Part shown: one piece after another, positions 13,801 to 54,689 of the stretch
How the letters are laid out: every line of letters begins with the position of its first letter
How positions within the stretch are numbered: the first letter of the stretch is position 1
The notes under the pieces: model-generated
What the model was told of the DNA's origin: nothing
Seen by the model: the letters and a program-made list of their open reading frames with translations, nothing else
The model's database searches: none
Sequence record: MN988561.1
Direction: 5' to 3' (one strand)
Length of the DNA: 64,000 nucleotides
Made by a program: the position numbers and the translations under genes

Positions 13801-14228
13801 CAATGGTCTTTACTCACGACTCTCACGATATGGAATTCAGATGTCAACATCTATTCGAGACGATTGATACTGTTCTCGAAACTGCAGTTGATCTACCTAA
13901 GCGTAGATTTAATCTTCCGATGAAGATCGACTGGGAAATCGGTGTTAATCAGTCTGATGCAATTGAGTTCAAAGAAACATCTCGATTTGATGAAGGTCGA
14001 GGTCGTACGTATCACTTTGAATGCAATGAAAATGCAATGATGCCTGTATTCGATCGTCTAAAGAACTACTTTGACATCGAATATGAAGTCACTTCTAGAG
14101 AGACTGAGAGAGCATCGCTGAAAGAAATGTTCGTTGCAAGACGAGCATTCTCTAAGTATCTTGGTACAGATGTAACCGTCGTAGGTGGTAACCTCAAACT
14201 AGTGAAGAAAAATGGGATAAAAATATGA
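10899..14228 (+). CDS. polA: Family A DNA polymerase with N-terminal family-4 uracil-DNA glycosylase-like domain
   Basis: CHMCPL, GEAP, HPS UDG motifs; FDYE, YNVNYE, YCCYDS exonuclease motifs; DYSQAEVR, RRYAKVCSFSILYG, THDS polymerase motifs A/B/C. Confidence 0.93.
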   Translation: MSLEIESIINKVDLTSDVRVCHMCPLAEKFGGCDNLGRVSFEIVGQNPKVLLVGEAPAAEDLKSERPFSSQSGSFLRMAMAEIGINDYALANVIMCQPKSVNIYTPTPEESAHCKAHIQRFVEKYKPETVILLGRGAYEVILPESYFAGQSVTNVTKKKAIEIDGVRYGAAFHPSYIFRNGGKESPQYIDFLNRLRRLTQNSVDAEFIVPFKIVNLDQLDETLEEFDVYKELGFDYEGTSLDPYDVNYQVLGLGMSSMDKAVYIDFHREPTQEEKNKISDFIRKKQMWVYNVNYETKVTWSKLSNDLIRFHDAMTLVKIDCSPGSLKDNARKYLNAEIWEEIVGNLTTLFYDIFQFMKKIEEKSPKLYNACRQANMEAIYLLKEDTAEKITGGKKNPKVTRYRTKQADHADYISAKISALREFCSDEDIQRGFTKFPYEWAAVPPKILGEYCCYDSYYTLGLKNHLWDKYKSVYQYYITQGWLGSTMESYGLNWDDDKASEHERFYLVEATTCLNQIIQKLDFGEKTLDIHTRASMIFNDSSLPDARKLIDLKGIFNPGTPDKLKQKPFWDKYVTDFTTAISIYLVLSEQILMSPIIPDQAIELVDRQDLNKAIENLMSVDWTKYDGVDLKTAKSIQKLMMDLIGTLDEKIGWKLYAFRSDVLEWQYKAHETYGGLDIDNRETWTPEFELLYLLRRYKKVEKSKNTYINGKVGRARVWLSTVDDYQKPPVRLKRYFDVMEERQWKKYELQHNERWILDTEFNVAGANTKRWKAAIHTVPWGSELREIYASRWWDGLFMHYDYSQAEVRILAAISQDRALLEAFADPDTDIHMFVASRIWKKDPKDVTPAERRYAKVCSFSILYGKSIEGFATEHTKGDVAAAKRIFDDFYAAFPQVKEWIEKQHRDAKVSGKVFTLFGDPLYLDMSDPNGAMRDAQNWPIQSSSSCVAGWAIWMNYEFSRNRNIPILPMVFTHDSHDMEFRCQHLFETIDTVLETAVDLPKRRFNLPMKIDWEIGVNQSDAIEFKETSRFDEGRGRTYHFECNENAMMPVFDRLKNYFDIEYEVTSRETERASLKEMFVARRAFSKYLGTDVTVVGGNLKLVKKNGIKI

Positions 14229-14956
14229 GTCGAGCAAAATCACTGATCGACATGATTAAAGGAACCAAGAACGAGTCTGGTGACGATGACGACGAAATCT
14301 CAAATCGTCGTCGTGGTGGTACTTGGATTGATCCTCATCATGTTGACGCAGCATCCAAGAATCTGAAGCGTACTCAGTCATTCTACAAGAAGGCTAGTAA
14401 TGCTAGCTCAGTTGAAGATCAAGAGTATTGGTTAGCTCGAGTCTTTAACAAGAATGCTGTTGCTAAGAGAATCTCCTCTGGATTCTATAACAAGGAAGCT
14501 AAGGCAGGAGTCGTAGGCGTCGATGACGTTGAAGATCTGTCAGCATCTCTTGTTACAGGTAATCCAAGAGCATCGGGTCGTGTTACGACTAAGGATCACA
14601 CACGTAATCCTGAAGAGATCTTTGCTGCTAACCAGATCGTTAAAGCTCTCTACGATACGATTGACAAGAAGTGGCCTGGACGTCCTCAGAACAAGATGGT
14701 TCTGACATACTTCCTCAAGGTCAATAAAGCTGATCATCTTATTAACTTTAAGCTTCCATACGATGATCGTGTGGAAGAAATCATCTCTTCTATTGAGAAA
14801 TATGCTAAAGACAATAACTCCAAGATTACTTGGACTACTCCTAAGCAGTTTCAGAATTTTTCAGGTATTGAAGACAGAATGTATGCAAAGGTCATGCAGT
14901 TCCTAGCAGATAATGCTGTAGAATTGGGTGCTCTTATCATTCGAGGTAAGAAATAA
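14225..14956 (+). CDS. Hypothetical protein, weakly sigma-factor-like, with MSRA N-terminal motif
   Basis: DDVEDL and NPEEIF..QIVKALYDTIDK...KMVL resemble ECF sigma region 2 and the entry to region 4; paralogous to 15399-16055. Confidence 0.45.
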   Translation: MSRAKSLIDMIKGTKNESGDDDDEISNRRRGGTWIDPHHVDAASKNLKRTQSFYKKASNASSVEDQEYWLARVFNKNAVAKRISSGFYNKEAKAGVVGVDDVEDLSASLVTGNPRASGRVTTKDHTRNPEEIFAANQIVKALYDTIDKKWPGRPQNKMVLTYFLKVNKADHLINFKLPYDDRVEEIISSIEKYAKDNNSKITWTTPKQFQNFSGIEDRMYAKVMQFLADNAVELGALIIRGKK

Positions 14957-15303
14957 TGGACCAGAGAGTACTTGACGTTCTAGCTCAAGGATATATTAAT
15001 CGTGAGCTTACACTACCAGCCGCTGATCTATCTAAGGCTGTTATTTATATTGTTAATTATCATGTTAGACATAAGACAAGTGGACTGGCAGATCTAAAGA
15101 CTGCTTATGGTAGTCCTGAGTCTTCTAATCTGGCAGTTAGGTTCTACTCTACAGGTCTATTTAATGGTGTTGTAGATAATGATTCTAAGAGCTCAGATCT
15201 ATTCTGGTCTCTATTCAATTCGATGACTACATCTCTGATGATTGAGTCCATCAATGAATCGTTAGCTGAATCCTCGAAAGAAGTTGAAGTGATCGCCGAA
15301 TAA
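14956..15303 (+). CDS. Hypothetical protein
   Basis: 115-aa ORF translationally coupled (TAATG) to the upstream gene. Confidence 0.7.
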   Translation: MDQRVLDVLAQGYINRELTLPAADLSKAVIYIVNYHVRHKTSGLADLKTAYGSPESSNLAVRFYSTGLFNGVVDNDSKSSDLFWSLFNSMTTSLMIESINESLAESSKEVEVIAE

Positions 15304-15398
15304 AGGCGCTTACTTGTTGGGTAAATGGGTGCAGTTAGGCTCTTGGAGGGATTCTTATTCGGTGAGCCCTCCAAGGCTTCCAGAAAGAGGGTAATGTA

Positions 15399-16055
15399 AT
15401 GGCTAGCGATAGACAGATGAAAGGTTACATCTGGGGAGAGCAAATCCTGGATCATGCTCACATTGAGCATTATGCAAGGGCGATGAGATCCGATGATGTA
15501 CGTACCGAGGAGTACTGGTACCAGGCAGTATTTCATGGGAAGAACCACTCTAAGGTTCTTCAGTCGGAAGTCTTTCATAAGAAAATCCGCAACAACGTTA
15601 CAAATAAAGTAGAAGTTGAGACTCTGGTTTCTACTTCTAACTCTGACGTCGTTAATGATGTTCTAGCAGAGGAGAGAAAGAATGAAGTAAAATATTCTCG
15701 AGTTATCGAGGATGATAAGGTCGGTAATATGTCCGACTATCTTCCCGATGCAACTGTTGGGTTCTCAGTTATTATCAGAGAAATAGCTGACAAATGCAAC
15801 GATGATGAAATCAAGGTCCTGAGCTACTTTGTATGTCAGGAACATCTGGATAATATCCTATTCGAGGGGAATTCGATTCATTCATCAAACGATCGCTTCA
15901 ATCGTACGATCCTAGGTATCTGGGAAAAGAATGTGAAGAGCATCAATGATCTGAATCGATTTGTAGGTACTCGTGCTCGTGCTGATAAAGCTAGGTGGAG
16001 ACTCTGCAATCTCTTGAAGAAGGAGTATCCTGAACTCTTGTCAGGAAAACGATGA
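15399..16055 (+). CDS. Hypothetical protein, paralog of 14225-14956, candidate sigma-like factor
   Basis: EEYWYQAVF vs QEYWLARVF; IKVLSYF vs KMVLTYF; similar C-terminal helix-turn-helix-like spacing. Confidence 0.45.
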   Translation: MASDRQMKGYIWGEQILDHAHIEHYARAMRSDDVRTEEYWYQAVFHGKNHSKVLQSEVFHKKIRNNVTNKVEVETLVSTSNSDVVNDVLAEERKNEVKYSRVIEDDKVGNMSDYLPDATVGFSVIIREIADKCNDDEIKVLSYFVCQEHLDNILFEGNSIHSSNDRFNRTILGIWEKNVKSINDLNRFVGTRARADKARWRLCNLLKKEYPELLSGKR

Positions 16056-16291
16056 GTCCATCTAACAAGCCCTATGACCCAAAGTTAGACACAATCATCT
16101 ACGAAAATAGACATCCTGAAACGGGTTTGTGCATCTCGGTGCATAAATACGGAAGCAGTGAACCGAAGATCAAGTTAGGTCCAAGAATCGTCGGTGACGA
16201 CTCCAAACCTGTCTACTTGAAATTAGGTAGAATATCTATAAACGAGTTTTTGTGGATATCCGAGGTCCTAAAACCCTACGTTAAATCTTAG
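16052..16291 (+). CDS. Small protein, possibly PC4/YdbC-like ssDNA-binding fold
   Basis: CISVHKY..SEPKIKL...KLGRISINEF pattern. Confidence 0.4.
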   Translation: MSPSNKPYDPKLDTIIYENRHPETGLCISVHKYGSSEPKIKLGPRIVGDDSKPVYLKLGRISINEFLWISEVLKPYVKS

Positions 16292-16303
16292 AGGATCTAA
16301 AAC

Positions 16304-19300
16304 ATGCAACTTTCTCTGAAGCCAGTCTCTCCAGAATCTGTACTCTTGACTTCACAAGGAGAGGTCAAGTCGTATGAGACTCTGAACTTCAAGACAGGTC
16401 TACCTGTTCGAGACGGTCTCTTGTGCCAGAAGGTATTCGGACCGATTAGAGACTACGTATGTGAATGCGGCAAGTACGATGGTAAGAAATACCAGGGACA
16501 TACTTGTGAGAAGTGCGGTGTTACGGTAGCGAGTTCACGTGCTCGTACTGTGAGAATGGGTCATATTGATCTTCAAGTTCCCATTCTTAATCCGTTGATG
16601 ATCGAGTCGATCGAATCGATTATAGGTCTCCCATCCAGAAAGATGGAGGACTTTATGAAGAACAAGATCTGCCTGAAATTTTCAGCATCTGGTACAGGTA
16701 ATCTTGTTCGTAAGGACGGTACACGAGGTATCGCGTATTTTGTAGATCCTAAGGAATCTGATCCTCGATCTCCTACTCTGCAGCATACGAAGTCGTCTCT
16801 GGTTCTTTATGAACTCTTGACGGATCTCGATATTGAAGAGACGCTCAAAGTCAATGGATCCAAGATCCTGAAGACCTATGTGCAGAAGAACTTCCCTCTT
16901 TCTAATCTCTTCATTCGTTATCTACCGGTATCTCCAGCAGGATACCGTCCAGTCACTCGTATGAGAAACTACTATTCTCAGCATCCCAAGAATGACCTTT
17001 ATCAGAAGATCATTCGACGTACTCTGCGAGTGAAGGAACTGGTTAATATCAATGCAGACTCAATGATTCTTCAGGAAGAGGCAGGCATTCTGTATAAGTC
17101 TGTCGATCAACTCTTCACTGGAGGAGCTCGAGATGGCGATGGGAACCCTCTTCCTGGAACCATTGAGAAGATGATGGGTAAGAGAGGTATTCTCCGAGGA
17201 AATCTTCTCGGTAAGCGTACCGACTACTCTGGACGTTCAGTTATCACTTCAGCAGGTGATCGTGTAGAAGTGGACCAGATTGGTCTACCTCGTAAGATGG
17301 CATACATCTTGTTTCGTCCTTTCATTCTCCGTTATCTGATGACGGAGTATCTGGATCATTATACTGAAGCACTGAAGCACTACGAGAAGAAGACTGTTAT
17401 CGCACTGAAGTCTCTCGAGATGGTAGCTAAGGATTATCCGATCATCATGAATCGTGCTCCTACGCTTCATAGATACGGTGTAATGTCTTTCCGTACCAAG
17501 TTGGTAAATGGTAAGGCTATCCTCGTTCATCCGATTGTATGTTCTCCATTCAATGCAGACTTCGACGGAGATACTGTAGCTATCCACTTGCCTCTTTCAG
17601 CTAAGTCTGTTCAGGAGTGCAAAGATTATCTCATGCCTCAGAACAATCTCCTGTCTTCACTTGATGGTGATCCGATCATCAATATGTCGCACGAGATGGT
17701 TATCGGTCTTGCTATCATGTCTCGTATTAAGGATCATGATAAGGGATTCGGTACATTCCGACGTATGGATGAGCTCGAGTATCTTCATACTGTCACCAAT
17801 CCTCAGACTAGCCGTCCTACACTTGAGATCTACGATAGAATCAAGTGGAAAGATGAACGAGGAGTGACAGAGACGTGCTATGGTCGACTTCTTCTCGAGC
17901 AGACATTCAAGACCAAGAATCTTCCGAAGGACTTCTCTAAGAAGACTATTCGTCGGATGATCAGTGATGCGTACGACAAGCTTGGACCTGATGAACTGAT
18001 TAAGGTACTGGATGTAGCTACTCAGCTTTCATTCAAGTATGCTACGAACTCTGGTTTCTCAGTTTCGATTGATGATTGTAAGGTACCTTCTACGAAACCT
18101 GCTAAGATTGCGAAAGCTAGAGAGCAGGAAGCTGAGAATTATCGTCAATTCGATAACAATGAAATCAATCTTGCAGAGCGTCGAGAGAACAATATTCGTC
18201 TCTGGAACGATGTCTTTGAAGATCTTCATCACGATTGGATGAAAGAAGCAGGTGAGGACAATCCGGTAGTTCTTATGTATACTACTGGTGCTCGTGTTAG
18301 TAAGTCTCAGGTCAATCAGATCGGAGTCGCTAAGGGTCTTGTATCCAATGCACTCAATCAGATCATCGAGAAGCCTATGGTTAACTCCTTCCGTGAAGGA
18401 TTGTCGACGTTTGAGTACTTTGCATCTTGCTCTGGATCTCGTAAGTCCATGGCAGACAAGAAGAATCTGACTCCCAAGTCTGGTTATCTTACACGTCGAA
18501 TGATTACTGCTAGCCGAGATTTCTTCATTAATTCAGATGATTGTGGTACCGATAAGGGTATCATGCGTACGATGAAGTCCTCGTATGGACGTTATCGTTG
18601 CGACAATGGTGAGATGATTGGTACGAACAATAGTGAAGAACTCGTTAAGGTTCGTAGTCCGATTCATTGTGAGTCGCATGGTGGTATCTGCGTTAAGTGC
18701 TACGGTATTGATCCTGCTAAGCGTAAGATCGTCACGAAGGGGTCCAACGTAGGAGCTATTGCAGCTCACTCGTTGACTGAATCTACAACTCAGATGACGA
18801 TGCGTACCTTCCATACATCTGGTGCAGTCGTTCTGAAGGATAGTCCGATGGTCATTACTGCCCAGAAGGATGGTAAGATCAGCTGGGATACTCTTCATCC
18901 TGTCTACAGCAAGATTCATGTTGTTGCAGATATGGAAGATTGGGATACACCTCTCAATGATCGATTGACGTATACAGTTCATAACAAGATGTCTCGCATT
19001 CTTGTTAAGGATGGTCAGTCTGTCAAGAAGGGTGATCCTCTAGCGATCTACGTTGATGAAGATCTTGAGAGCGACGACGTCAGTGGATCGCTCCCTAAGA
19101 TTGAATCTCTGTATGAAGGTCGAGTACCTCCGAAAGCGTACAAGTCAGTTATCTCGAAGGTAGCTGGTAAGATTGGTATTAACATCGGAGATGAAGGTCT
19201 TAAGATCTTCGTTGATGGTGAATACCAAGGTACTGCTCATCCTAAGACTCCGGTATTCGTTGCTCAAGGTCAGTATGTTGAAGCTGGTCAGACTCTCTCG

Positions 19301-19687
19301 TTTGGTTCTCCAGACGTAGTAGGTTTGTTCAAGGAGACAAAGGATCTTGATCTCGCTTACAAGGTCTTTGAGAAGACTCTGATGGATATCTACAATAAGG
19401 AAGGTCTCCAGCCAGTACCAACTCATTCGGAGATGATCTTCAGAGCGATGTCTAATCTGGTATACACCGAGAGTGGTCCTTATGGTCTTCGATCCCATGG
19501 AGACAAGGGTAGCATTATGCTGAAGGGTATTACTCAGATTGGTGCGAATCATCCGTCCTGGTTGAAGTCAATCGGATTCGGATGGGTAGCTCAGACGATC
19601 AGAACTTCTGCTGTGAATCTTGCTACCACGTACGATCTTCCTACCGAACGTCTGATGTCTGGTGAATTGATTTACGAGGATAAATAA
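16304..19687 (+). CDS. rpoC: Phage-encoded multisubunit RNA polymerase beta-prime subunit
   Basis: CECGKY/CEKC zinc finger, NLLGKRTDYSGRSVI, NRAPTLHR, catalytic NADFDGD, bridge helix SGYLTRR, trigger loop TQMTMRTFH. Confidence 0.95.
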   Translation: MQLSLKPVSPESVLLTSQGEVKSYETLNFKTGLPVRDGLLCQKVFGPIRDYVCECGKYDGKKYQGHTCEKCGVTVASSRARTVRMGHIDLQVPILNPLMIESIESIIGLPSRKMEDFMKNKICLKFSASGTGNLVRKDGTRGIAYFVDPKESDPRSPTLQHTKSSLVLYELLTDLDIEETLKVNGSKILKTYVQKNFPLSNLFIRYLPVSPAGYRPVTRMRNYYSQHPKNDLYQKIIRRTLRVKELVNINADSMILQEEAGILYKSVDQLFTGGARDGDGNPLPGTIEKMMGKRGILRGNLLGKRTDYSGRSVITSAGDRVEVDQIGLPRKMAYILFRPFILRYLMTEYLDHYTEALKHYEKKTVIALKSLEMVAKDYPIIMNRAPTLHRYGVMSFRTKLVNGKAILVHPIVCSPFNADFDGDTVAIHLPLSAKSVQECKDYLMPQNNLLSSLDGDPIINMSHEMVIGLAIMSRIKDHDKGFGTFRRMDELEYLHTVTNPQTSRPTLEIYDRIKWKDERGVTETCYGRLLLEQTFKTKNLPKDFSKKTIRRMISDAYDKLGPDELIKVLDVATQLSFKYATNSGFSVSIDDCKVPSTKPAKIAKAREQEAENYRQFDNNEINLAERRENNIRLWNDVFEDLHHDWMKEAGEDNPVVLMYTTGARVSKSQVNQIGVAKGLVSNALNQIIEKPMVNSFREGLSTFEYFASCSGSRKSMADKKNLTPKSGYLTRRMITASRDFFINSDDCGTDKGIMRTMKSSYGRYRCDNGEMIGTNNSEELVKVRSPIHCESHGGICVKCYGIDPAKRKIVTKGSNVGAIAAHSLTESTTQMTMRTFHTSGAVVLKDSPMVITAQKDGKISWDTLHPVYSKIHVVADMEDWDTPLNDRLTYTVHNKMSRILVKDGQSVKKGDPLAIYVDEDLESDDVSGSLPKIESLYEGRVPPKAYKSVISKVAGKIGINIGDEGLKIFVDGEYQGTAHPKTPVFVAQGQYVEAGQTLSFGSPDVVGLFKETKDLDLAYKVFEKTLMDIYNKEGLQPVPTHSEMIFRAMSNLVYTESGPYGLRSHGDKGSIMLKGITQIGANHPSWLKSIGFGWVAQTIRTSAVNLATTYDLPTERLMSGELIYEDK

Positions 19688-19690
19688 AGG

Positions 19691-19888
19691 ATGCAAGACC
19701 TATCTCAACTATGTGAAGTTGAGATGGAGAAGTTAGTTGAAATACTAATGAGATCGACTCACTTGACACTCGACGGTGTTGAGCTGAGTCGATCTCATGA
19801 ATATCATAATAGCCCATCTGTCTCTACAATTAAAACTCATAAAGTCCTTGATGACTCATACATTACAGTTAGACTGAAATATGTATAA
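19691..19888 (+). CDS. Hypothetical protein
   Basis: 65-aa ORF with AAGG SD, coupled to neighbours. Confidence 0.55.
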   Translation: MQDLSQLCEVEMEKLVEILMRSTHLTLDGVELSRSHEYHNSPSVSTIKTHKVLDDSYITVRLKYV

Positions 19889-20594
19889 CTTGCAATACGA
19901 TGATGGAATTCTTAAATCAAATAGGGAGTCTCTCGTAAACATACGAGCTCCATTCTTCAAACGGATTGATCGACGATCTCGCAAGTCGTCCATCGAGAGA
20001 TTAATGATCTCACCTGATACAACAAGAAATTGTAGTCAGATTAAGAGATTTCTCGTTCCGTTCAACGATAAGTACTTGTACAGCATGCATGTGACTTATC
20101 GTGACGACTTAAAGTGTCAATCTATTTATGACACTAACAAGTCTCTCAAGCGAATCCTCCGATCTAAAATGTTAATGTCAGCTGTGAACAGGATAAATGA
20201 GTATCCTCAACTCAAAGCAGACATATTGTCTGTAATCAAGCTTGTAGTTAATTCTTGGGAGTTTGATGGTCTTATCACAGACATTGAATGGCTCCAGGAT
20301 GAAAATCTACTGGATACTGTGATATCTAAGTGGAAACTGAAGAAGTACGAATCCTCTACAGAGCGAGGGTCAGTGATCAATCTCTTAATAAAGAGTTTTG
20401 ATGGAGTTCCACTTAATCTTCTATCTCATCTAGAGATGAAGAAAATCAGTATTGAGGATACTGACATTGAGGACGTTAAGTTTAAATGTCCTCTGATATT
20501 AATGCGATCGAATTCATCTTGTGCAGGATTCATATCTAAGTCCTTGGATAAAGGACTACCTGTGAGTCTGTTCAAGATTGATATAAAAGAGTAA
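19881..20594 (+). CDS. Hypothetical protein
   Basis: 237-aa ORF ending at the convergent terminator. Confidence 0.7.
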   Translation: MYNLQYDDGILKSNRESLVNIRAPFFKRIDRRSRKSSIERLMISPDTTRNCSQIKRFLVPFNDKYLYSMHVTYRDDLKCQSIYDTNKSLKRILRSKMLMSAVNRINEYPQLKADILSVIKLVVNSWEFDGLITDIEWLQDENLLDTVISKWKLKKYESSTERGSVINLLIKSFDGVPLNLLSHLEMKKISIEDTDIEDVKFKCPLILMRSNSSCAGFISKSLDKGLPVSLFKIDIKE

Positions 20595-20650
20595 AAATAA
20601 AGGCCACTAGGCGGGACCCTTCTCGGAGGATTCACCTAGTGGCCTATTTT
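20593..20650. terminator. Bidirectional terminator between convergent early and late units
   Basis: AGGCCACTAGG/CCTAGTGGCCT stem with an A-tract on the left and a T-tract on the right. Confidence 0.8.
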
Positions 20651-20656
20651 TGTGTC

Positions 20657-20911
20657 TTATGGAAGAAGTGGTACGAAACTCTTCAGCTTATTGTACACAT
20701 CATCCTGCTTACCCATTTCAGTCGAATACTTATCAAGAATCGTCTGATTATCTGGGAATTCATTACCTTGATTAGCTACCCAGTCGACATAATCATGCCA
20801 ATCCTGGTCATCGTGAAGATCACGATGCTGCTTAATCAGATTTGCATATTCAGCATCTGTGAATTCATGCAATGATGAAAGCTTCTCAAGAATGTCTTTA
20901 GCTCTACTCAT
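20657..20911 (-). CDS. Small acidic protein with MSRA N-terminal motif (candidate internal head protein)
   Basis: GGAG-N6-ATG start giving MSRAKDILEKLSSLHE. Confidence 0.7.
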   Translation of the reverse strand: MSRAKDILEKLSSLHEFTDAEYANLIKQHRDLHDDQDWHDYVDWVANQGNEFPDNQTILDKYSTEMGKQDDVYNKLKSFVPLLP

Positions 20912-20922
20912 ATTAATCTCCG

Positions 20923-21378
20923 TCAAGCTACTACAGCGAGTTCATTACTTGGTACTTCATGAACGTCACCATCGACTTCGATCATGCAGATTTCACCGTT
21001 CACTTTAAGAACAGTGCCTGTACCGTGAACTGATTCAACAGTGTTATTAAGAAGGATCTCACGACCATTCTTATCTTCGCATTCGATGAATGCTCTCTGA
21101 CCATTGTCAGGAGTGTAATCAGGAGCTTTACCTGTTACGCCATCTGCATTCACATTGTTCCAGTGACCGTATGCGTCAAAGTATAGTACGTCGAGATCCG
21201 AACTATCTTGGAACTTGTCACGTTCAGCCATAGCATCCTTGAAAGGCATTGCTAGAGGACCTAGGATAACTTTATTGTTGGTACGATTAACAATGTACGT
21301 ACCAATGCGTTTACTGGTATCTTCGTCGATACCTGTGATCTTTGACAGATCACTAATCAGACCTGATGCTCTGCTCAT
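20923..21378 (-). CDS. Hypothetical protein with MSRA motif and C-terminal SH3/Tudor-like beta segment
   Basis: MSRASGLISDLSKITGIDE start; AGGA SD. Confidence 0.7.
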   Translation of the reverse strand: MSRASGLISDLSKITGIDEDTSKRIGTYIVNRTNNKVILGPLAMPFKDAMAERDKFQDSSDLDVLYFDAYGHWNNVNADGVTGKAPDYTPDNGQRAFIECEDKNGREILLNNTVESVHGTGTVLKVNGEICMIEVDGDVHEVPSNELAVVA

Positions 21379-21406
21379 ATTAAATATCCTTGTTAGCGTT
21401 TATGAC

Positions 21407-21706
21407 TTAGAGACCAGCAGCCTTGCGCTTTCTCATAGTCATTTGACGCTTACGAGAGATAGCAGCTTGCTGTCCTCTCTTCTTACGAGCACCCATCTTC
21501 GCAGCCTTACGCTTAGCGATGATCTCACCGGCACTCATCTTGACGCAAGTCTTACCATCAATCTTGTAACCTGGAGGGCAATCAAGAATAACACTCTTGG
21601 CTCCACCTCTGAATGTTACTTTCTTCTTAGGAGCAGCTTCACTAGCTGGAATAGAAGACTCATAGTAAGCATCAATTTTAGTGATCAAATCTGCAGATTT
21701 AGACAT
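21407..21706 (-). CDS. Prohead core protein, T4 gp68-like
   Basis: Basic C-terminus RKRQMTMRKRKAAGL resembles the gp68 tail; CPPGYK motif; MSKSADLI start. Confidence 0.6.
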   Translation of the reverse strand: MSKSADLITKIDAYYESSIPASEAAPKKKVTFRGGAKSVILDCPPGYKIDGKTCVKMSAGEIIAKRKAAKMGARKKRGQQAAISRKRQMTMRKRKAAGL

Positions 21707-21774
21707 AATGTACATCCATTTTAGTTTATTTAATGAGGATTATCACTTTACACAATTATAAAGTGTGCACAAAG

Positions 21775-21803: not shown

Positions 21804-21818
21804 AATCCTTAGCTTTAT

Positions 21819-46363: not shown

Positions 46364-46372
46364 TTACGACTC

Positions 46373-50000: not shown

Positions 50001-50145
50001 CGTCGAATTTACGAAGATTATTCATCGTCATCTTAAATTCGACGAGTTCTTCTTCGACCTCAAGTCTCAGTTTTCTGAGTTCTTTATCTGAGATTTTAGA
50101 TCCATTATCTTTGTCGGGATGAGATCCCTCGCGGGTCGTTACCAT
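47053..50145 (-). CDS. Tape-measure-like protein with tail lysozyme and M15-like peptidase domains
   Basis: Helical N-half; GES..N...G.AQW...R...FERP lysozyme-like; RHDHGGAAD...IHMD peptidase-like. Confidence 0.75.
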   Translation of the reverse strand: MVTTREGSHPDKDNGSKISDKELRKLRLEVEEELVEFKMTMNNLRKFDAETNRRLSQSDFNELARLNEKIYKHKRDLDRSDAISIRKLRSRVADLVKDAEVLSKSGVSGSYSIYDQDRSNQNLDAAIKKLEQQSKKISVMDLKRSSDLSLYSHRERINLDNRRVGSEKFKDAFLKNPGRFNPDDLIKDIYGVGFGSLGLHGIDDILGISDRLSGVTKVGLGKLRGRYSKKDYLNKFASVDKESSVADEKRQEDDSENLEDIKTGIQSLAKSNKTVIDQLKESEVTQTKMINNQMTQIRLEEKSISEISEAINRDNISDSLREKKASKGLLGMLAGIADGSGLNWKDALGIGGGAAGGGGLLGWLKGKGGSVGGIFKGSSSILGKVLGKAVPLIGAYTAYSLVDEIPTDPKELQKFIEKNSKSAEGLDKWILDNIGTPRSWLGLGQKSLEDSRKSESQLNREREKEREDLAKKIAKELNPRLNFNSGLPNYPGAGVSASGISYNPADGLPGLGGSSSTGSGGGGGSGRSRRSGRSAKTPQQIAAERQRANLFNSGFLGDGKGSFSNSNMPQSAGFSGSSGSNFKMLGASAQDLSKPGISGSGANDNVKSWYDFLTKPVSQGGLGRTPEQARGEIASMRGESGSGLNSAAYNANDVDGESGGTAQWHDSSRNGSTRFTDLKKFAASQGKDWTDVGVQQQYYRQEMLGSESRANAKIMSATTAAEAMSAHISGFERPQNPSGEIGKRSQYLNDTQASGKPNFNLLGASPGSGMSLMMPNFGPGQGSAGVDKIVSENQGQTAGIRKQGIEPDLKRNIARSVYKTLGPGYRVEVYSGGQNGKEEGGPRTGSTRHDHGGAADLKIIGPDGKQISQEEYARVSQGYIASGYGGVGMQMSGGGIHMDKHTDRAKFWNYNNEGGPIVSKESQRLIDQGLAGVNPEYKYTDAEADAYLNGPNFTPQGTDPRKVRTTVVPQMDMPNVNRIQPPTVAPNISQAPAAAAPASLQTAMNTSTAKDTKNSIDDLGISMFQQMFLG

Positions 50146-50288
50146 TCTTCATCTCCTCTTGGAGTCTCTCGTAGATGTAGGTAGCTTCCACATAGTCAAG
50201 GGATTTCAGACTCATAGGATCAGCGTTCAGGTAGAATGCCAAACCGAACGACATTTCTAACAGACTCTGCGGATTGACGAAAGGGAAA
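50105..50288 (-). CDS. +1 frame extension of the tail assembly chaperone (G/GT-type product)
   Basis: TTT CCC TTT C site, then 60 open codons LLEMSFGLAFYLNAD...YIYERLQEEMK; not in the ORF track. Confidence 0.6.
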
Positions 50289-51005
50289 TATCAAATCATT
50301 GATATCCTCCATCGCCAAATGGTTATCCGCACCACAATGACTACATTTAGTTTCGATTGATTGTCTGCCAAGATACATCATCTTGTCTACGTAATTGAGC
50401 ATATCAAGAAGATCGCCTGTAGCGTTCTCGATAATGCCCTTTGCTGTACTATAAGGCAGGTTACTTACAGATCTCGCGAAAATCTCGAGACCTTTATCCT
50501 CGTCTTCATCTTCATCAAAGTCGATCTTTAGATAGTTACCGACTGAGAGTGGCATAATGTGTAAATCAATGTCATCTCCGACAGGGATCACAGCAGGTAG
50601 TGCTGGAACTTGAATATCGGAGAATTCAATATTTGACAATTCATGTGTTTGAGAATTTGATTCTTCGCACGAATTGCATCTAAATCTGCTGGTAAACTTA
50701 GTATGGGAGAATGAAGAGATCTTTCTCAGAGATGAGACATAGAGAAAATCGTAATACGACAGATCGTTCTTATCGAATCCCTCTGTAGTAATGCCGTCCA
50801 GTACGAATAGGAATCGATCTCGTAAGCTCAATTTGGATGAGCTGAACTTCTGAAGTTCACCGTAAGTGAATGGAACATACTTAACGGTCGAGCCCTTCGG
50901 GTATGGAAGGAACTTGGATGGCAGATCTCTTACTTGAATAATAGGTAGATGTGACTTATCAGATGCTGCTTTAGTTAAGTCAGCTAAATTGTCTATGACT
51001 TTCAT
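50220..51005 (-). CDS. Tail/baseplate hub assembly chaperone (gp26/gp51-like)
   Basis: CNSC and CSHC zinc pairs; immediately upstream of the tape measure. Confidence 0.75.
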   Translation of the reverse strand: MKVIDNLADLTKAASDKSHLPIIQVRDLPSKFLPYPKGSTVKYVPFTYGELQKFSSSKLSLRDRFLFVLDGITTEGFDKNDLSYYDFLYVSSLRKISSFSHTKFTSRFRCNSCEESNSQTHELSNIEFSDIQVPALPAVIPVGDDIDLHIMPLSVGNYLKIDFDEDEDEDKGLEIFARSVSNLPYSTAKGIIENATGDLLDMLNYVDKMMYLGRQSIETKCSHCGADNHLAMEDINDLIFPFRQSAESVRNVVRFGILPER

Positions 51006-51030
51006 TTCTGTTTATCCTCTAGAAATAGCG

Positions 51031-51516
51031 TTAGCTATCTTGATGCCCTACAACGTTGAATGCAACAGAGTAGAGCTTTAAATCTGCTTGTGAGTTCAAA
51101 GATTCCTGAACATTACCATCTGGGTAAGCAAAGTATGTAGTTGACTTAATGATATTCTTCTTAGTATCCAACTTACACACGATAATCTCTCTGGCAGCAT
51201 CGTCAATGCACATAACGCCATCAGAGTCGTCGTAGATTTCATCGTGCCATGCTTGTAACCATGTTGATAATGATTTCTTAACATTATCTGCAAATGTCAT
51301 CTGAAGTTCAGGAGTCGAACTATTTTGAGGAAACTTGTACTGCTTGAGAAAGAATGGAGTAGTGAATGAAGAACTAAAGATTCTATTCTCAGTAATATCA
51401 ACTGCAGGAAACCATGCGTTGAAAGGTGATGGTGCAGAGGGAATACGAATATCCCAGAGGTTAGTCGTACCCCACTGCACTTCACGTAGTTGATCAATGG
51501 ACTTGAGGAATGGCAT
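51031..51516 (-). CDS. Tail tube-like protein (second tube paralog)
   Basis: Tube-fold pattern LQMTFAD...W..W...I...G; next to the tube gene. Confidence 0.65.
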   Translation of the reverse strand: MPFLKSIDQLREVQWGTTNLWDIRIPSAPSPFNAWFPAVDITENRIFSSSFTTPFFLKQYKFPQNSSTPELQMTFADNVKKSLSTWLQAWHDEIYDDSDGVMCIDDAAREIIVCKLDTKKNIIKSTTYFAYPDGNVQESLNSQADLKLYSVAFNVVGHQDS

Positions 51517-51548
51517 TGGATAATCTCCTTATGACATTCCTCGTCGCA

Positions 51549-52076
51549 TTATAGAGGAGTGTCTTCAAAGTAATCATACGAGATAGTGAGCGTAGGCTTC
51601 AGGATGTCCGCAGACTGACCCTGTAGCTGACCACCAGCATCGTAGTCTTCGAGATAACAACCTAGTAGGTTGTACTCCCAGATGGGAACGTCTCTACGGT
51701 TGAGACGTTCGATCTTAATCATGCATTCAACCTGAGATTTCTCTTGCTGAACACCTGTCTTCGTTTCAGAGCAGATTTCTCTCCAGTTACGAATGAACGT
51801 AGAGATCTTGTTGTCGACCGATTCGTTCATTGTAAGAGTAATCGTACCAGAAGGTAGATAGAGACCTGGCTGCTTAACGCGATGACCTCGGATCATGATT
51901 TCAGTTGATGTACCAGTCGACTTAGGAATGTCGGTTGATTCACAACGTAAGTTCAGATCCTGAAAGGTTACAGTTCTAGCTAAAGCTCTCGGAAACGTGA
52001 CGAATGTCAAGTTCCAGTTAACTGTAGTAGCCCAGTCACCTACATTTCTAACATTTTCAATAGTTGGACGAGCCAT
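51549..52076 (-). CDS. Tail tube protein (gp19-like)
   Basis: LRCESTDIP, GTITLT..E.VD..I..F...WR, LTISYDYF. Confidence 0.85.
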   Translation of the reverse strand: MARPTIENVRNVGDWATTVNWNLTFVTFPRALARTVTFQDLNLRCESTDIPKSTGTSTEIMIRGHRVKQPGLYLPSGTITLTMNESVDNKISTFIRNWREICSETKTGVQQEKSQVECMIKIERLNRRDVPIWEYNLLGCYLEDYDAGGQLQGQSADILKPTLTISYDYFEDTPL

Positions 52077-52090
52077 CTTATATTATCTCC

Positions 52091-53920
52091 TTAAACTGCT
52101 GCCTGAGCAAGCTTAAATTCAGTACCCTTACGAGTAACGATAAGCGAGCATGGGATTTCTTCAACAGATTCAACAGGCTTAATAAAGACGTCAACAATTA
52201 GCTTGTGATTACTAATATCATCGTCGCTATTGTTATCGGTATCGCACTGTACTCTGTACTCATAGATACCTCTTCTCGAGACGTACGATTCGAGTGCAGC
52301 AGATACCATTGATCTGACGAGAGATCTTGTAGTATCGTCGTTGACTTCGAATAGGAATTCTTCGAGAGCTTCCTTGAGAGAAGGCTCGATTGAGATGAGA
52401 AGTAGTCTTGTATTGAGACGATCCAGAGTCGAAGGAGTAGCAAGAAGTGTCTTCTGCCCCCATACAACGATACCTCTACCAGGAGCGAATCTGAGAGGAT
52501 TGATACCGTTATCGTACAGGTAGTCCATCTCACCCTTGGTGAATCTGCGACGAACATCGATAACGTTTAGAACACCTCTACGGAAACCAGCAACTGGGAA
52601 CCATAGTTCATAGTTGTCTGCAGTTTCAGATACGAGACCTGCTACGAAACCGTCTGGAGAGACATAAAGATCACGGTCGTTGTAACGATCGTAAATCTTG
52701 ACGTGAGTCGTATAAATTGCAGCATATGATGAATTAGCATTCAGAGTGTAATTCTTGTATGCAACGATCTGATTCAGATAGTCACTATCATCTTCTGCAG
52801 AATAAGGTGTTGAGAGAATAGCTACACAATCCATTCTGGCTGTGCAGATATCAATCATTGCCTTATGATAGTTGACAGTAGCACGACCACCGTCAATCAG
52901 AAGAGTCATCGGATTGCTGTCAGGATTAGCTAGAGTCTGGAGAGCCAGAATACAATCACTGTCAGTTGCAGCAGAACCATCAGCACCACCTACAATTGCT
53001 AGTGCAACAGCTTGATCCTTGATCGCTCCAGTAACAGAGGGATTATCTACTGCTCTAATATAATTGGACGATGCTAGAACATCTTCCAGATAGATATTAT
53101 TGTTGTAGCCATCCTTGGTACCAGGAGTCTTCGAGCAGATGAAGGATTCAACATACGTATTCATATTGTCTTTCTTGAAGACCTGAATAGCGAATGTACC
53201 TGTCTGTCTTGTGAACTCAGTGGCTGGACGAATCGAGAAAGTACCACTACCTGCAGTTGTTAGTACGATTGCAGTACCAGCTACAGCTAGATCTGCAGAA
53301 GCAGCAAGCTTAATAGTGGTAGCAGATACTCTGATTGCAAAGTAGGTCGTAGCTGAATCAAGAGGAGCAGGAAGCGTTGCTGTAGAACTTAATCTAACAG
53401 GATATCCTGTACCCCAGTCTTGTGTTACTGTCCAGATACCTGTACCTTGAACAACTGTCGCAGTTTCAAGAGCTTTGTAATTAAAGATTTTGATACGTAG
53501 ATCGTTGTTCCATGCTCCAGGGTTAGAACCTACAATCGTGAACGATTCAGTGCTAAAAGAGTGAGCATCAACATCGACTTCACCAGCTGAGAATGAAGAG
53601 TTAGCCGTAGCATTAGATGCTGGCTCGACCTTCAGACCACCAGTCAACATGCCTGTAGTGCTAGGTCTAACTGTCCAGACTTTATTACTCTTCTGGAGAG
53701 CAGCTAGAACTGAATAGTGAGCATTGTCAAAACCTACTCCAACAGTCTCGTTAGGAGTAAACGTCTTTAGAAATTGAGTATCAGAAGTACTTAGGACTGC
53801 CTTATTAACAGGACCCTTCTTAGCTCCAGGAACAACTACACCGATGTACAGTCCAGGGAAACTAGGAACTCTAGTACTTATATCAATTTCTTTAATTTGT
53901 GCATAAGGAGCTGCCATCAT
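52091..53920 (-). CDS. Contractile tail sheath protein (gp18-like)
   Basis: KGPVNKAVL, WFPVAGFRRG, GINP, WGQKTL, RLNTRLLL, FEVND. Confidence 0.93.
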   Translation of the reverse strand: MMAAPYAQIKEIDISTRVPSFPGLYIGVVVPGAKKGPVNKAVLSTSDTQFLKTFTPNETVGVGFDNAHYSVLAALQKSNKVWTVRPSTTGMLTGGLKVEPASNATANSSFSAGEVDVDAHSFSTESFTIVGSNPGAWNNDLRIKIFNYKALETATVVQGTGIWTVTQDWGTGYPVRLSSTATLPAPLDSATTYFAIRVSATTIKLAASADLAVAGTAIVLTTAGSGTFSIRPATEFTRQTGTFAIQVFKKDNMNTYVESFICSKTPGTKDGYNNNIYLEDVLASSNYIRAVDNPSVTGAIKDQAVALAIVGGADGSAATDSDCILALQTLANPDSNPMTLLIDGGRATVNYHKAMIDICTARMDCVAILSTPYSAEDDSDYLNQIVAYKNYTLNANSSYAAIYTTHVKIYDRYNDRDLYVSPDGFVAGLVSETADNYELWFPVAGFRRGVLNVIDVRRRFTKGEMDYLYDNGINPLRFAPGRGIVVWGQKTLLATPSTLDRLNTRLLLISIEPSLKEALEEFLFEVNDDTTRSLVRSMVSAALESYVSRRGIYEYRVQCDTDNNSDDDISNHKLIVDVFIKPVESVEEIPCSLIVTRKGTEFKLAQAAV

Positions 53921-53937
53921 TATCTCCGTTGGTATAC

Positions 53938-54369
53938 TTAGAAGCGTACGAAGCTAATGGCGCTAGGTAGCTCTTCTTCAATCAACTCTTCGGTCAAATC
54001 TAAGGCATTCCCTCTTGCAGGAATGAAAATATTAGTAGAGTCGTACTTAAGTGTAATAGGGTAGTCTGCTCTAGAATAGAGGTTGATCTTAGTCNNNNNN
54101 NNNNNNNNNNNNNCAAAGTTAGCAGGGATACCTGTAGGATAGACTCTAGAAATCCAGGAAGGCTTCTCGTCGGGAGGGAATACATAAGGCGTAGAAGGAA
54201 TATAACGATATAACTTCTTCGTAATAGGCTTATGCTTTTCGTAATACTTTAGACTACGCTTTACAATAAGCCAGAATCTATTCATATCGAAGTTGATAAG
54301 ACTGATATCACCGACGATGAATTGTCCTGTTTCAAGTAACATATAGTCAATTATCTCGGTGAGTTTCAT
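53938..54369 (-). CDS. Neck/head-completion protein (gp13-like), gap inside
   Basis: IIDY.L...G N-terminus; position between head and sheath genes. Confidence 0.5.
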   Translation of the reverse strand: MKLTEIIDYMLLETGQFIVGDISLINFDMNRFWLIVKRSLKYYEKHKPITKKLYRYIPSTPYVFPPDEKPSWISRVYPTGIPANFXXXXXXXTKINLYSRADYPITLKYDSTNIFIPARGNALDLTEELIEEELPSAISFVRF

Positions 54370-54371
54370 TA

Positions 54372-54689
54372 TCAGTCATCCTCGTCGTCTGAATCAACTT
54401 CTTCAGTGTAGGATACGCCAGCATCATCGAGCTTAGACTTCAGAGTTTCATAGAAGCTCTGAGCATCTTCAACACTCATCTTGACAACGCAGTCATAGAT
54501 TCCAAGTTCTCCTGTATCGTCAACAGAAGCTAGCTGATCAGCTACCCAGTCTTCAATCTCTTCAGGAGCATCTTCCATTGAATCAACAATATTCTCGCAT
54601 GCGATAGCGATCGCATCCAGTGTATCTTCATCATCTTCAACGATGGCATTAGGATACACCTTGTTAAGTAGTTCACTAGAACGCGACAT
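54372..54689 (-). CDS. Highly acidic small protein with MSRS motif (prohead core/internal protein candidate)
   Basis: MSRSSELLNKVYPNAIVE then Asp/Glu-rich sequence. Confidence 0.65.
   Translation of the reverse strand: MSRSSELLNKVYPNAIVEDDEDTLDAIAIACENIVDSMEDAPEEIEDWVADQLASVDDTGELGIYDCVVKMSVEDAQSFYETLKSKLDDAGVSYTEEVDSDDEDD

What the first reader, a model, noticed from the sequence alone, without database searches (positions are those of the whole stretch)
14225..54689. Shared N-terminal MS(R/K)(A/S)xx(L/I)(I/L)...E motif on five scattered proteins: candidate capsid-targeting propeptide
Seen: MSRAKSLIDMIKGTKNE (14225), MSRAKDILEKLSSLHE (20911), MSRASGLISDLSKITGIDE (21378), MSKSADLITKIDAYYE (21706) and MSRSSELLNKVYPNAIVE (54689). 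Each is an amphipathic helix with a Glu at position 16-19, and the bodies are otherwise unrelated. Known: T4 internal proteins use a short N-terminal targeting sequence removed by gp21 after Glu. One carrier here is gp68-like, and the phage has a gp21-type protease. Inference: a new packaging signal marking the injected proteome, potentially useful for cargo loading.
Basis: partly seen in the sequence, partly recalled or inferred. Interest (0 to 1): 0.75.

Follow-up and report, generated by a model that had tools for sequence, protein, structure and literature searches.

The report
Shared capsid-targeting leader on phage proteins
A Rhizobium phage puts the same 13-19-residue N-terminal helix on a dozen otherwise unrelated small proteins, most likely as an address label that loads them into the forming head before a T4-type protease cuts it off; the principle is known from phage T4, but this label and its wide use in a little-studied phage group are new.

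Summary
All five N-termini are at the stated coordinates, none touches an assembly gap, and the motif is far from chance: 10 strict matches genome-wide against 0.13 expected.

The window is the last 64 kb of Rhizobium phage RHph_TM61. The near-identical complete genome RHph_Y65 carries 12 such proteins, not five. Conservation is at protein level, because the codons differ. The bodies are unrelated.

Four lines of evidence tie the leader to the head:
- One carrier is a gp68-like prohead core protein, and its orthologues in Ralstonia phage RP13 and Acinetobacter phage Ab1-TPeters carry the leader too.
- The phage has a gp21-family (Peptidase_S77) protease fused to a scaffold.
- In metagenomic relatives, at least 8 leader genes per 20 kb are interleaved with portal, protease, capsid and sheath genes.
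- In Yersinia phage YerA41, all six leader-type proteins are late and were found in virions by published mass spectrometry.

In RP13 and YerA41 the motif that ends the leader recurs in the capsid protein's N-terminal region. In RP13 it also sits near the scaffold's C-terminus. That is the pattern expected of protease sites.

Best reading: a T4-CTS-like targeting propeptide, a new member of a known kind. Cleavage, packaging and injection are untested for this phage.

The parts
14225..14956 (+). Carrier 1 (243 aa, EVB64_321). Leader is residues 1-17 (14225-14275) and ends K-N-E|S. An acidic linker follows, then a basic body.
   Evidence: The body has no homologue outside the genus. It is a weak paralogue of the leaderless gene at 15399-16055 (E 6e-5). 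It overlaps the stop of the DNA polymerase gene.
20657..20911 (-). Carrier 2 (84 aa, EVB64_328). Leader is residues 1-16 (20864-20911) and ends L-H-E|F. The body is acidic.
   Evidence: Third gene of the trio that opens the late (-) strand block.
20923..21378 (-). Carrier 3 (151 aa, EVB64_329). Leader is residues 1-19 (21322-21378) and ends I-D-E|D. The body is acidic.
   Evidence: AlphaFold without an alignment was uninformative (pLDDT 45.6).
21407..21706 (-). Carrier 4 (99 aa, EVB64_330, annotated 'prohead core protein'). Leader is residues 1-16 (21659-21706) and ends Y-Y-E|S. The body is a very basic gp68-like domain with a CPxGYK...C motif.
   Evidence: phrog_3503 at E 3.4e-12. tblastn homologues lie in the portal-to-protease slot of Vibrio K469 and Pseudomonas Cygsa01. 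It is homologous to RP13 ORF67 (E 5e-6), which also carries the leader.
54372..54689 (-). Carrier 5 (105 aa, EVB64_368). Leader is residues 1-18 (54636-54689) and ends I-V-E|D. The body is extremely acidic (net charge -26). It is the third gene downstream of the major capsid gene.
1..186 (+). C-terminal end of a sixth carrier (EVB64_306, equal to Y65 gp352, 214 aa). Its leader, which ends L-N-E|T at residue 13, lies just upstream of the window.
57080..58591 (-). Prohead protease-scaffold fusion (503 aa). The gp21-family protease domain covers residues 41-184 and a coiled-coil half follows. It is the presumed processing enzyme and the presumed docking partner of the leaders.
   Evidence: Pfam Peptidase_S77 at 34.7 bits against a cut-off of 27. 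phrog_207 at E 1e-33. The C-terminal region carries Q-N-E-S and L-N-E-D.
55647..57059 (-). Major capsid protein (470 aa), the presumed fellow substrate. It has I-A-E at residues 6-8 and a conserved hydrophobic-L-E-S near residue 35.
   Evidence: The I-x-E at residues 6-8 is kept in four of the six metagenomic relatives aligned (L028, L029, L031; L-R-E in L018), but not in L027 or L021. The cleavage sites themselves are not determined.
15399..16055 (+). Leaderless weak paralogue of the body of carrier 1. It shows the leader is an add-on module.
   Evidence: BLASTP E 6e-5, residues 54-108 against 25-79.
59370..60914 (-). Portal protein. Together with the conserved 238-aa gene at 58584-59300 it frames the head-gene block in which relatives insert leader genes.
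   Evidence: In L028, L029 and L031 leader genes lie between the portal and the 238-aa gene or the protease.

Best explanation
The N-terminal 13-19 residues form a lineage-specific capsid-targeting propeptide of the T4 CTS type. The consensus is M-S-K/R-A-x-D/E-L/I-L/I-x-K-L/I/V-x-E, an amphipathic helix.

Proposed mechanism:
1. While the prohead core assembles, the helix docks its carrier onto a common partner. The most likely partner is the coiled-coil scaffold half of the S77 protease-scaffold fusion.
2. Proteins with unrelated bodies are thereby enclosed by the capsid shell.
3. The gp21-family protease then cuts after a Glu that usually has a hydrophobic residue at P3. This removes the leader and frees the mature protein.
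4. Some carriers, such as the basic gp68-like protein, are structural core parts. Others are cargo that may stay with the DNA and enter the host.

Shown: the motif; its non-randomness; selection at protein level; its modularity; its presence on the gp68-like core protein in three phages; the embedding of leader genes in head-gene clusters; virion association in YerA41; the protease family; and co-variation of the leader-end motif with a motif in the capsid protein's N-terminal region in RP13 and YerA41 (in RP13 also at one site near the scaffold C-terminus).

Inferred: docking, cleavage, packaging and ejection in this phage.
For: 1. Twelve carriers with unrelated bodies share the leader, and their codons differ, so selection acts on the peptide.

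2. Modularity. The body of carrier 1 has a leaderless paralogue. gp68-like bodies in Vibrio and Pseudomonas phages have other N-termini. A zinc-ribbon body shared by L027, L028 and L031 (E 2e-9) carries an 'MRLID...' leader in L027 and the 'MSKA...' leader in L028 and L031. Leaders therefore evolve in concert within a phage, as expected for one shared partner.

3. Anchor to the prohead core. The gp68-like protein carries the leader here, in RP13 (ORF67) and in Ab1-TPeters. The gp67-slot protein of Cygsa01 starts with the same motif.

4. Synteny. In L028, L029 and L031 (capsid protein 50-67% identical), at least 8 leader genes per ~20 kb lie between portal, protease-scaffold, capsid and sheath genes, including the slot that holds genes 67/68 in T4.

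5. Experiment in a relative. YerA41 genes 003-006, 008 and 009 are the leader-type proteins. All six are 'late' and particle-associated by LC-MS/MS (PMC7354516 Table S2). That is 6/6 against 5/19 other late proteins of 180 aa or less; my hypergeometric p is 0.003. For the four strict leaders p is 0.03.

6. Protease-site logic. T4 gp21 cuts after L/I-x-E, and T4 propeptides are 10-19 residues long (PMC9026906). Of 46 leaders from 7 phages, 39 have [LIVMFY]-x-E ending at residues 9-19. In RP13, [IV]NE[SA] has 19 hits in long ORFs, 13 of them in the ~12-kb head block. They fall at leader ends, at residues 11 and 43 of the capsid protein, and at 482/509 of the protease-scaffold. In YerA41 the leader end KKFE recurs as KKYE and KKFE in the capsid N-terminus.

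7. An S77 protease is present.

8. Cargo in relatives includes enzymes, as for T4 Alt and IPI. RP13 ORF132 is an Acb1 anti-CBASS homologue at 55 bits. Others are a GNAT, an AAA ATPase and a CCA-type nucleotidyltransferase.
Against: There is no proteomic or N-terminal data for this phage or its genus.

Eight of the 12 carriers sit on the + strand among replication, tRNA and early-type genes. I found no promoter motif that would show late expression.

In this phage the leader-end motif is loose: LNE, IHE, LTE, IDE, IVE, YYE, KNE, THE, and none in gp182. Unlike in RP13, no crisp motif clusters in head proteins.

YerA41 particles contain 63 proteins, many of them replication enzymes, so 'particle-associated' is a lenient criterion there.

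The YerA41 leader scores only 6-12 bits with the Rhizobium matrix, so homology of the two leader types is plausible but not proven.

gp182's 'leader' overlaps a DUF6171 match, so it may be a chance member.
Confidence: 0.65

Rival explanations
1. The helix is a shared docking module for a hub that is not the capsid, such as the phage RNA polymerase, a host factor or a phage protease or chaperone. It would tag a set of cytoplasmic small proteins and enzymes for regulation or localisation, not packaging.
For: Eight of 12 carriers lie in early/middle-type regions. Carrier 1 sits between the DNA polymerase and RNAP beta' genes, and RP13 ORF143 lies just upstream of RNAP beta'. Leader-bearing bodies in relatives are cytoplasmic enzyme types: Acb1, GNAT, AAA and a CCA-adding enzyme. 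T4 Acb1 is not known to be packaged (my own knowledge).
Against: It does not explain four things: why the gp68-like core protein carries the leader in three phages; why leader genes are packed into head-gene clusters; why all six YerA41 leader proteins are late and in particles; and why leader ends copy a motif found in the capsid protein's N-terminal region, and in RP13 also near the scaffold C-terminus.
Confidence: 0.15
2. All carriers are assembly-only core or scaffold accessories. The leader binds the core, but the proteins are degraded and expelled at maturation like T4 gp67/gp68 fragments. Nothing is delivered to the host and there is no 'injected proteome'.
For: One carrier is gp68-like. 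T4 gp67 and gp68 are cut into fragments that mostly leave the head (PMC9026906, PMC5694885). Several carriers are small and highly charged, like scaffolding parts. RP13 ORF66 and ORF69 have extra internal [IV]NES sites.
Against: YerA41 leader proteins are detectable in mature particles. Enzyme cargos such as Acb1, GNAT and AAA make little sense as disposable scaffold. Bodies turn over between lineages much as T4 internal proteins do.
Confidence: 0.12
3. It is a paralogous gene family. One ancestral small gene duplicated many times, the C-terminal parts diverged beyond recognition, and the N-terminus is kept for folding or oligomerisation with no addressing role.
For: Carriers occur as tandem arrays: 20657-21706 here, 4-5 in a row on the 181-kb and 237-kb contigs (L044, L051), and YerA41 205c-211c.
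Against: Bodies belong to unrelated, independently recognisable families: gp68-like, zinc ribbon/DUF6171, Acb1, GNAT, AAA and PolyA_pol. Those families exist elsewhere without the leader. The same body carries different leaders in different lineages.
Confidence: 0.06
4. It is a nucleotide-level element, such as a shared translation-initiation region, a regulatory RNA site or a recombination hotspot, and the peptide is a by-product.
For: The motif sits exactly at start codons. An 11-mer occurs only twice in the genome, about 25 nt upstream of two carriers.
Against: Synonymous codons differ freely among carriers. Ser is AGC/AGT/TCA/TCT/TCG, Arg/Lys is AGA/CGA/CGT/AAA/AAG, and Leu/Ile is equally mixed. 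The upstream regions share nothing beyond a ribosome-binding site.
Confidence: 0.02

Closest known systems
T4 capsid targeting sequence (CTS) of internal proteins IPI, IPII, IPIII and Alt (Mullaney & Black 1996; reviewed in PMC9026906, PMC3012670, PMC5694885)
   Same: Both are short N-terminal peptides (10-19/20 residues in T4, 13-19 here) shared by otherwise unrelated proteins of one phage. Both end in hydrophobic-x-Glu, the gp21 site L/I-x-E. Both sit in a phage with a gp21-family protease and a scaffolding core. In both, cargo genes are scattered and turn over fast between relatives, and the cargo includes enzymes and, in T4, anti-restriction proteins.
   Different: The sequence and minimum length differ (13 residues against 10). 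There are more carriers per genome: 12 here, and at least 8 per 20 kb in relatives. The same leader is also on the gp68-like core protein. The protease is fused to the scaffold. The leader consensus changes between lineages (MSKA..., MSRIS...KKFE, MRLVD...). Targeting and cleavage are not demonstrated. I did not compare the letters with the T4 CTS.
T4 prohead core proteins gp67 and gp68
   Same: Carrier 4 belongs to the gp68-like family (phrog_3503), whose members lie between the portal and protease genes in T4-like gene order. The gp67-slot protein of Pseudomonas phage Cygsa01 (phrog_4097, related to phrog_1064 'prohead') begins with the same MSKA..II..L.E motif.
   Different: Here the gp68-like gene has moved about 36 kb away from the head genes, to the start of the late strand. 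In RP13 and Ab1-TPeters it lies after the capsid gene. There is no direct BLAST match to T4 itself; the link rests on profile family, synteny and others' annotation.
Propeptides of inner-body and ejection proteins in phiKZ, 201phi2-1 and SPN3US, cut by a gp21-related protease at S/A/G-x-E or A-x-E (PMC5694885, PMC7411985)
   Same: A prohead protease cuts after Glu. Propeptides are thought to target proteins into the head. Diverged paralogues keep identical N-terminal 15 residues (SPN3US gp53 and gp54).
   Different: Those propeptides are mostly longer than 100 residues and sit on paralogous families. Here the leaders are short, T4-like, and sit on unrelated bodies.

Membership tests
T4-type capsid targeting propeptide (CTS) | A short N-terminal peptide shared by otherwise unrelated proteins of the same phage | tested here: met
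   There are 12 carriers. The matrix score gap is 19.6 bits or more against 8 or less. Bodies are unrelated by BLASTP.
T4-type capsid targeting propeptide (CTS) | The peptide ends in the prohead protease site (T4: L/I-x-E, cut after Glu) within about 10-20 residues | tested here: inconclusive
   Nine of 12 carriers have [LIVMFY]-x-E ending at residues 9-19. In the window these are LHE, IDE, IVE and YYE, but one carrier has KNE. Across phages the count is 39/46. The true specificity of this protease is unknown.
T4-type capsid targeting propeptide (CTS) | The phage has a gp21-family protease and a scaffolding core | tested here: met
   Peptidase_S77 scores 34.7 bits against a cut-off of 27, with a coiled-coil C-terminal half. 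phrog_207 matches at E 1e-33.
T4-type capsid targeting propeptide (CTS) | Carriers are present in virions | not testable with these tools
   No proteome exists for this genus. In the relative YerA41, 6/6 leader-type proteins are particle-associated (PMC7354516 Table S2).
T4-type capsid targeting propeptide (CTS) | The peptide is removed in the mature virion | not testable with these tools
   Only indirect evidence exists. Leader-end motifs recur in the capsid protein's N-terminal region in RP13 and YerA41, and in RP13 at one site near the protease-scaffold C-terminus. In this phage no such motif clusters.
T4-type capsid targeting propeptide (CTS) | The peptide alone is enough to package a foreign protein | not testable with these tools
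   This needs a leader-reporter fusion experiment.
T4-type capsid targeting propeptide (CTS) | Sequence similarity to the T4 CTS itself | not tested
   I made no comparison with the T4 peptide. By the published description the length and key positions differ.
gp68-like prohead core protein (phrog_3503), for the gene at 21407-21706 | A profile match, plus homologues in the portal-to-protease slot of T4-like head modules | tested here: met
   phrog_3503 matches at E 3.4e-12. Homologues in Vibrio K469 and Pseudomonas Cygsa01 lie in that slot. The family is annotated 'gp68-like' or 'prohead core protein' in Ackermannviridae. There is no direct hit to T4.
Peptidase S77 (T4 gp21 prohead protease), for the gene at 57080-58591 | A Pfam match above the gathering score | tested here: met
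   34.7 bits against a cut-off of 27, residues 41-184. I did not inspect the catalytic residues.

The most novel reading that the evidence does not exclude
The leader could be a clade-wide, lineage-co-evolving address label. With it, the 'RP13-like' phages with hypermodified DNA and their metagenomic relatives would preload capsids with a large, fast-changing set of proteins. That set would include counter-defence enzymes such as the leader-bearing Acb1 anti-CBASS homologue of RP13, delivered as protein together with the DNA. If so, the packaged and injected proteome could be read directly from sequence, and the label could be reused to load chosen cargo.
Probability: 0.3. Interest if true: 0.75.

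Novelty: new member of a known kind. Interest (0 to 1): 0.58.

Why it matters
If the leader works as proposed, the proteins a phage packs into its head can be listed from the genome alone for a whole, barely studied clade. That clade includes RHph, RP13, YerA41, Carin-5 and many large metagenomic phages.

It also gives concrete candidates for proteins delivered with the DNA. Among them is an Acb1-type anti-CBASS enzyme in RP13, which would mean some counter-defence arrives ready-made.

Different leaders on orthologous bodies offer a natural experiment on how an address label and its receptor co-evolve.

It would also provide a second, independent CTS for loading foreign proteins into phage heads, outside T4.

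Tried and rejected
- Nucleotide-level element: rejected, because the codons differ.
- Late-promoter search: TATAAATA and TTAAATAA-type words, and upstream regions of late genes and carriers, gave no usable consensus. One 11-mer is shared by two carriers. Expression timing of the + strand carriers stays open.
- Crisp cleavage motif in this phage: [LIV]NE[STA] does not cluster in head proteins, unlike in RP13.
- Function of the bodies: Pfam and PHROGs found nothing for 10 of the 12 carriers. tblastn of the 243-aa carrier hits only the genus.
- AlphaFold of two carriers without alignments: pLDDT 45.6 and 38.2, so I ran no fold search. The one hint is that residues 3-12 of carrier 1 are modelled as a helix followed by coil.
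- The search for homologous proteins with the Cygsa01 gp67-slot protein returned only close relatives.
- A degenerate DNA pattern scan of viral contigs gave 18 loci. Most are single, probably chance or unrelated hits. Three are true clusters.
- My first guess was that Ab1-TPeters CDS0153 is the positional counterpart of carrier 5. That was wrong: it is the gp68-like orthologue.
- Literature searches found no paper on the virion proteome of Kleczkowskaviridae or Cuauhnahuacvirus.

Full report
**What the window is.** The 64-kb window is identical to the last 64 kb (138965-202964) of Rhizobium phage RHph_TM61, MN988561.1. This is a ~203-kb myovirus of Kleczkowskaviridae, genus Cuauhnahuacvirus. 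Its sister isolates are at least 99% identical. One of them, RHph_Y65 (NC_070967.1), is complete and gap-free, and I fetched it whole as L003-L007. The genus belongs to the 'RP13-like' group of phages with a UDG-fused family-A DNA polymerase and thymidine-hypermodified DNA (PMC12686479). The late (-) strand carries a T4-like head module: terminase, portal, a conserved 238-aa gene, a protease-scaffold fusion and the major capsid protein.

**Gaps first.** None of the five genes contains an unread base. Flank mapping onto Y65 shows that the N runs are placeholders hiding 12 to 1490 bp. ORFs that cross them, such as 53938-54369 next to carrier 5, are artefactual joins. The finding itself is unaffected. 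The hidden stretches in Y65 hold no further carrier.

**The observation.** The five N-termini are exactly where stated, and GenBank uses the same ATG starts. In six frames of the window, MS[RK][AS] occurs six times, and five of these are the reported gene starts.

Genome-wide in Y65 the strict pattern ^MS[RK][AS]..[LIV][LI] is met by 10 of 448 first-ATG N-termini. After shuffling each column the expectation is 0.13, and none of 5000 shuffles reached 10.

A position matrix built from the leaders separates 12 carriers (19.6-33.5 bits) from every other true N-terminus (8 bits or less). In Y65 names these are gp182, gp200, gp202, gp213, an unannotated 85-aa ORF at 130992, gp357, gp352, gp339, gp332, gp331, gp330 and gp286. 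The last five are the window's genes. The C-terminal end of gp352 is window 1-186.

Codons for the conserved residues differ freely between carriers, so the conservation is in the peptide and not the DNA. Residues 2-13 have a helical hydrophobic moment above at least 92% of shuffles in 11 of 12 carriers; the gp68-like carrier is the exception. After removing 20 residues, no two bodies are alike (best BLASTP E 0.2). Their net charges range from +19 to -26.

**The leader is a module.** Three results show this.
- The body of carrier 1 (14225) has a weak paralogue two genes downstream at 15399-16055. It lacks the leader and the acidic linker (E 6e-5).
- The body of carrier 4 (21706) matches the gp68-like family phrog_3503 (E 3e-12). 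Its tblastn homologues in Vibrio phage K469 and Pseudomonas phage Cygsa01 lie between portal and protease, the place of genes 67/68 in T4, and have quite different N-termini. The family is annotated 'gp68-like' or 'prohead core protein' in Ackermannviridae.
- A zinc-ribbon body shared by three metagenomic relatives (E 2e-9) carries an 'MRLID...' leader in L027 and the 'MSKA...' leader in L028 and L031. L027's other small head-cluster genes all start with the L027 type.

So unrelated bodies within a phage share a leader, and related bodies in different phages carry different leaders. That is concerted evolution, and it is what one common binding partner per phage would produce.

**Link to the head.**
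1. The phage encodes a gp21-family protease: Pfam Peptidase_S77 at 34.7 bits against a cut-off of 27, and phrog_207 at E 1e-33. It is fused to a coiled-coil scaffold-like half.
2. The gp68-like core protein carries the leader in three phages: this one, Ralstonia phage RP13 (ORF67, E 5e-6 to carrier 4) and Acinetobacter phage Ab1-TPeters (CDS0153, E 6e-19 to ORF67). The gp67-slot protein of Cygsa01 begins with the same motif and hits phrog_4097. The Vibrio gp67-like protein hits that family too, together with phrog_1064 'prohead'.
3. RP13's capsid protein is 34% identical. RP13 has at least 8 leader proteins, five of them in the head block, including one between portal and protease.
4. Three viral contigs with capsid proteins 50-67% identical (L028, L029, L031) each have at least 8 leader genes within ~20 kb. 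These are interleaved with portal, the 238-aa gene, protease-scaffold, capsid, two conserved head-tail genes and sheath. A degenerate DNA scan found further tandem arrays on a 181-kb and a 237-kb contig.
5. Yersinia phage YerA41 (capsid protein 32% identical) has its own version, MSRIS.LNKKFE(A/S), on four proteins, plus two weaker ones. All lie just upstream of the portal. By length and order these are genes 003-006, 008 and 009 of the published Table S2. All six are 'late' and particle-associated by LC-MS/MS (PMC7354516). Among the other late proteins of 180 aa or less, only 5 of 19 were detected. My hypergeometric p is 0.003 for six, and 0.03 for the four strict ones.

**Link to cleavage.** T4 gp21 cuts after L/I-x-E, and T4 head proteins have 10-19-residue targeting propeptides (PMC9026906; PMC5694885). 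Of 46 leaders from seven phages, 39 have [LIVMFY]-x-E ending at residues 9-19, most often at 13.

In RP13 the leaders end in [IV]-N-E-[SA]. That four-residue word has 19 hits in the genome's long ORFs, 13 of them in the ~12-kb head block. They fall at leader ends, at residues 11 and 43 of the capsid protein, at 482/509 of the protease-scaffold, and inside two small head-cluster proteins.

In YerA41 the leader end KKFE recurs as KKYE and KKFE in the first 37 residues of the capsid protein. A leader-end motif that changes between phages together with the motif in the capsid protein's N-terminal region is what a shared protease would produce.

In the Rhizobium phage itself the picture is looser. 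The ends are LNE (twice), IHE, LTE, LSE, LHE, IDE, IVE, YYE, KNE and THE, with none in gp182. No short word clusters in head proteins. The capsid protein does have I-A-E at residues 6-8, and an I/L-x-E at that position is kept in four of six relatives. It also has a conserved hydrophobic-L-E-S near residue 35. The scaffold tail has Q-N-E-S and L-N-E-D.

**What the cargo may be.** Most bodies are orphans. In relatives, leader-bearing bodies include:
- an Acb1 anti-CBASS phosphodiesterase homologue (RP13 ORF132, 55 bits against a cut-off of 27);
- a GNAT acetyltransferase;
- an AAA ATPase;
- a CCA/poly(A)-polymerase-HD enzyme.

Such enzymes fit the T4 precedent, where Alt and IPI are packaged and ejected (PMC9026906, PMC3012670). 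They could equally be read as ordinary cytoplasmic proteins, which keeps the rival 'other hub' reading alive.

**Weighing.** The best explanation is a T4-CTS-like targeting propeptide. It docks carriers on the scaffolding core and is removed by the S77 protease (confidence 0.65). Its weak points are:
- no data from this phage;
- eight carriers on the early/middle strand with unknown timing;
- a loose cleavage motif;
- the lenient YerA41 particle proteome (63 proteins).

The rivals, with my confidence in each:
- a non-capsid hub (0.15);
- assembly-only core accessories with no delivery (0.12);
- a plain paralogous family (0.06);
- a nucleotide-level element (0.02).

**Comparison and novelty.** The principle has been known from T4 since 1996. 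CTS-like peptides on variable internal proteins are described for T-even phages, and long propeptides for phiKZ-like phages.

Five things are new here:
- the peptide itself;
- its presence on the gp68-like core protein as well as on cargo;
- the number of carriers;
- its spread through the RP13-like clade and large uncultured phages;
- the lineage-specific leader swaps on orthologous bodies.

I found no paper that describes it. I file it as a new member of a known kind, of moderate to good interest.

Noticed in passing
window 1009-1073 (+), within the unannotated stretch 282-1469: There is a tRNA-like Rfam match (33.9 bits, model positions 6-65) just upstream of the TROVE/Ro60-like gene at 1470-3038, between two tRNA-Leu genes. 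Bacterial Ro60 partners (YrlA-type Y RNAs) contain a tRNA-like module, so this may be a phage Y RNA.
   Followed up: partly
window 10899-14228 (+): The DNA polymerase has an N-terminal uracil-DNA-glycosylase-like domain. This is the UDG-fused PolA described for phages with thymidine-hypermodified DNA (YerA41, RP13, Carin-5). PMC12686479 lists RHph_TM30 of this genus in that group.
   Followed up: partly
window gaps 30379-54113, e.g. ORF 53938-54369: The N runs are placeholders. Relative to RHph_Y65 they hide 12, 70, 242, 327, 566, 798, 1235 and 1490 bp. ORFs called across them, including several GenBank CDS of TM61, are chimeric.
   Followed up: yes
L014:26518-27105 (Ralstonia phage RP13 ORF132): A leader-bearing protein is an Acb1 anti-CBASS homologue (Pfam PF23474, 55 bits) with a 37-residue N-terminal extension. 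It is a candidate for a pre-packaged counter-defence enzyme.
   Followed up: partly
L028, L029, L031 around 8200-11650: The major capsid genes of these metagenomic relatives are split into two or three pieces by 0.3-1.5-kb insertions, probably introns, inteins or homing-endonuclease genes. RP13 has an HNH gene right after its capsid gene.
   Followed up: no
window 16304-19687 (+): This is a single 1127-aa RNA polymerase beta'-like gene. In RP13 and YerA41 the beta' is split into two genes. The YerA41 RNAP subunits were reported as early-expressed yet particle-associated (PMC7354516).
   Followed up: no
RHph_Y65 137625 (+) and 159854 (-), the latter being window ~21734: The 11-mer ATTAAATAAAC occurs only twice in the 207-kb genome. 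Both copies lie about 25 nt upstream of leader-gene start codons (gp352 and the gp68-like gene). It may be a shared promoter element.
   Followed up: partly
window 54702-55208 (-) and 55219-55554 (-): Two small genes lie between the capsid gene and carrier 5. One has a SWIM-like C-x-C...C-x-H pattern and is conserved in L028, L029 and L031. The other has a long Ala/Lys/Glu-rich tail resembling histone-H1-like or decoration proteins.
   Followed up: no
L010:17858-18073 (RP13 ORF75): The annotated start (17888) is probably wrong. An ATG 30 nt upstream gives a full leader ending A-I-N-E|S, but it overlaps the portal gene by 83 nt.
   Followed up: partly
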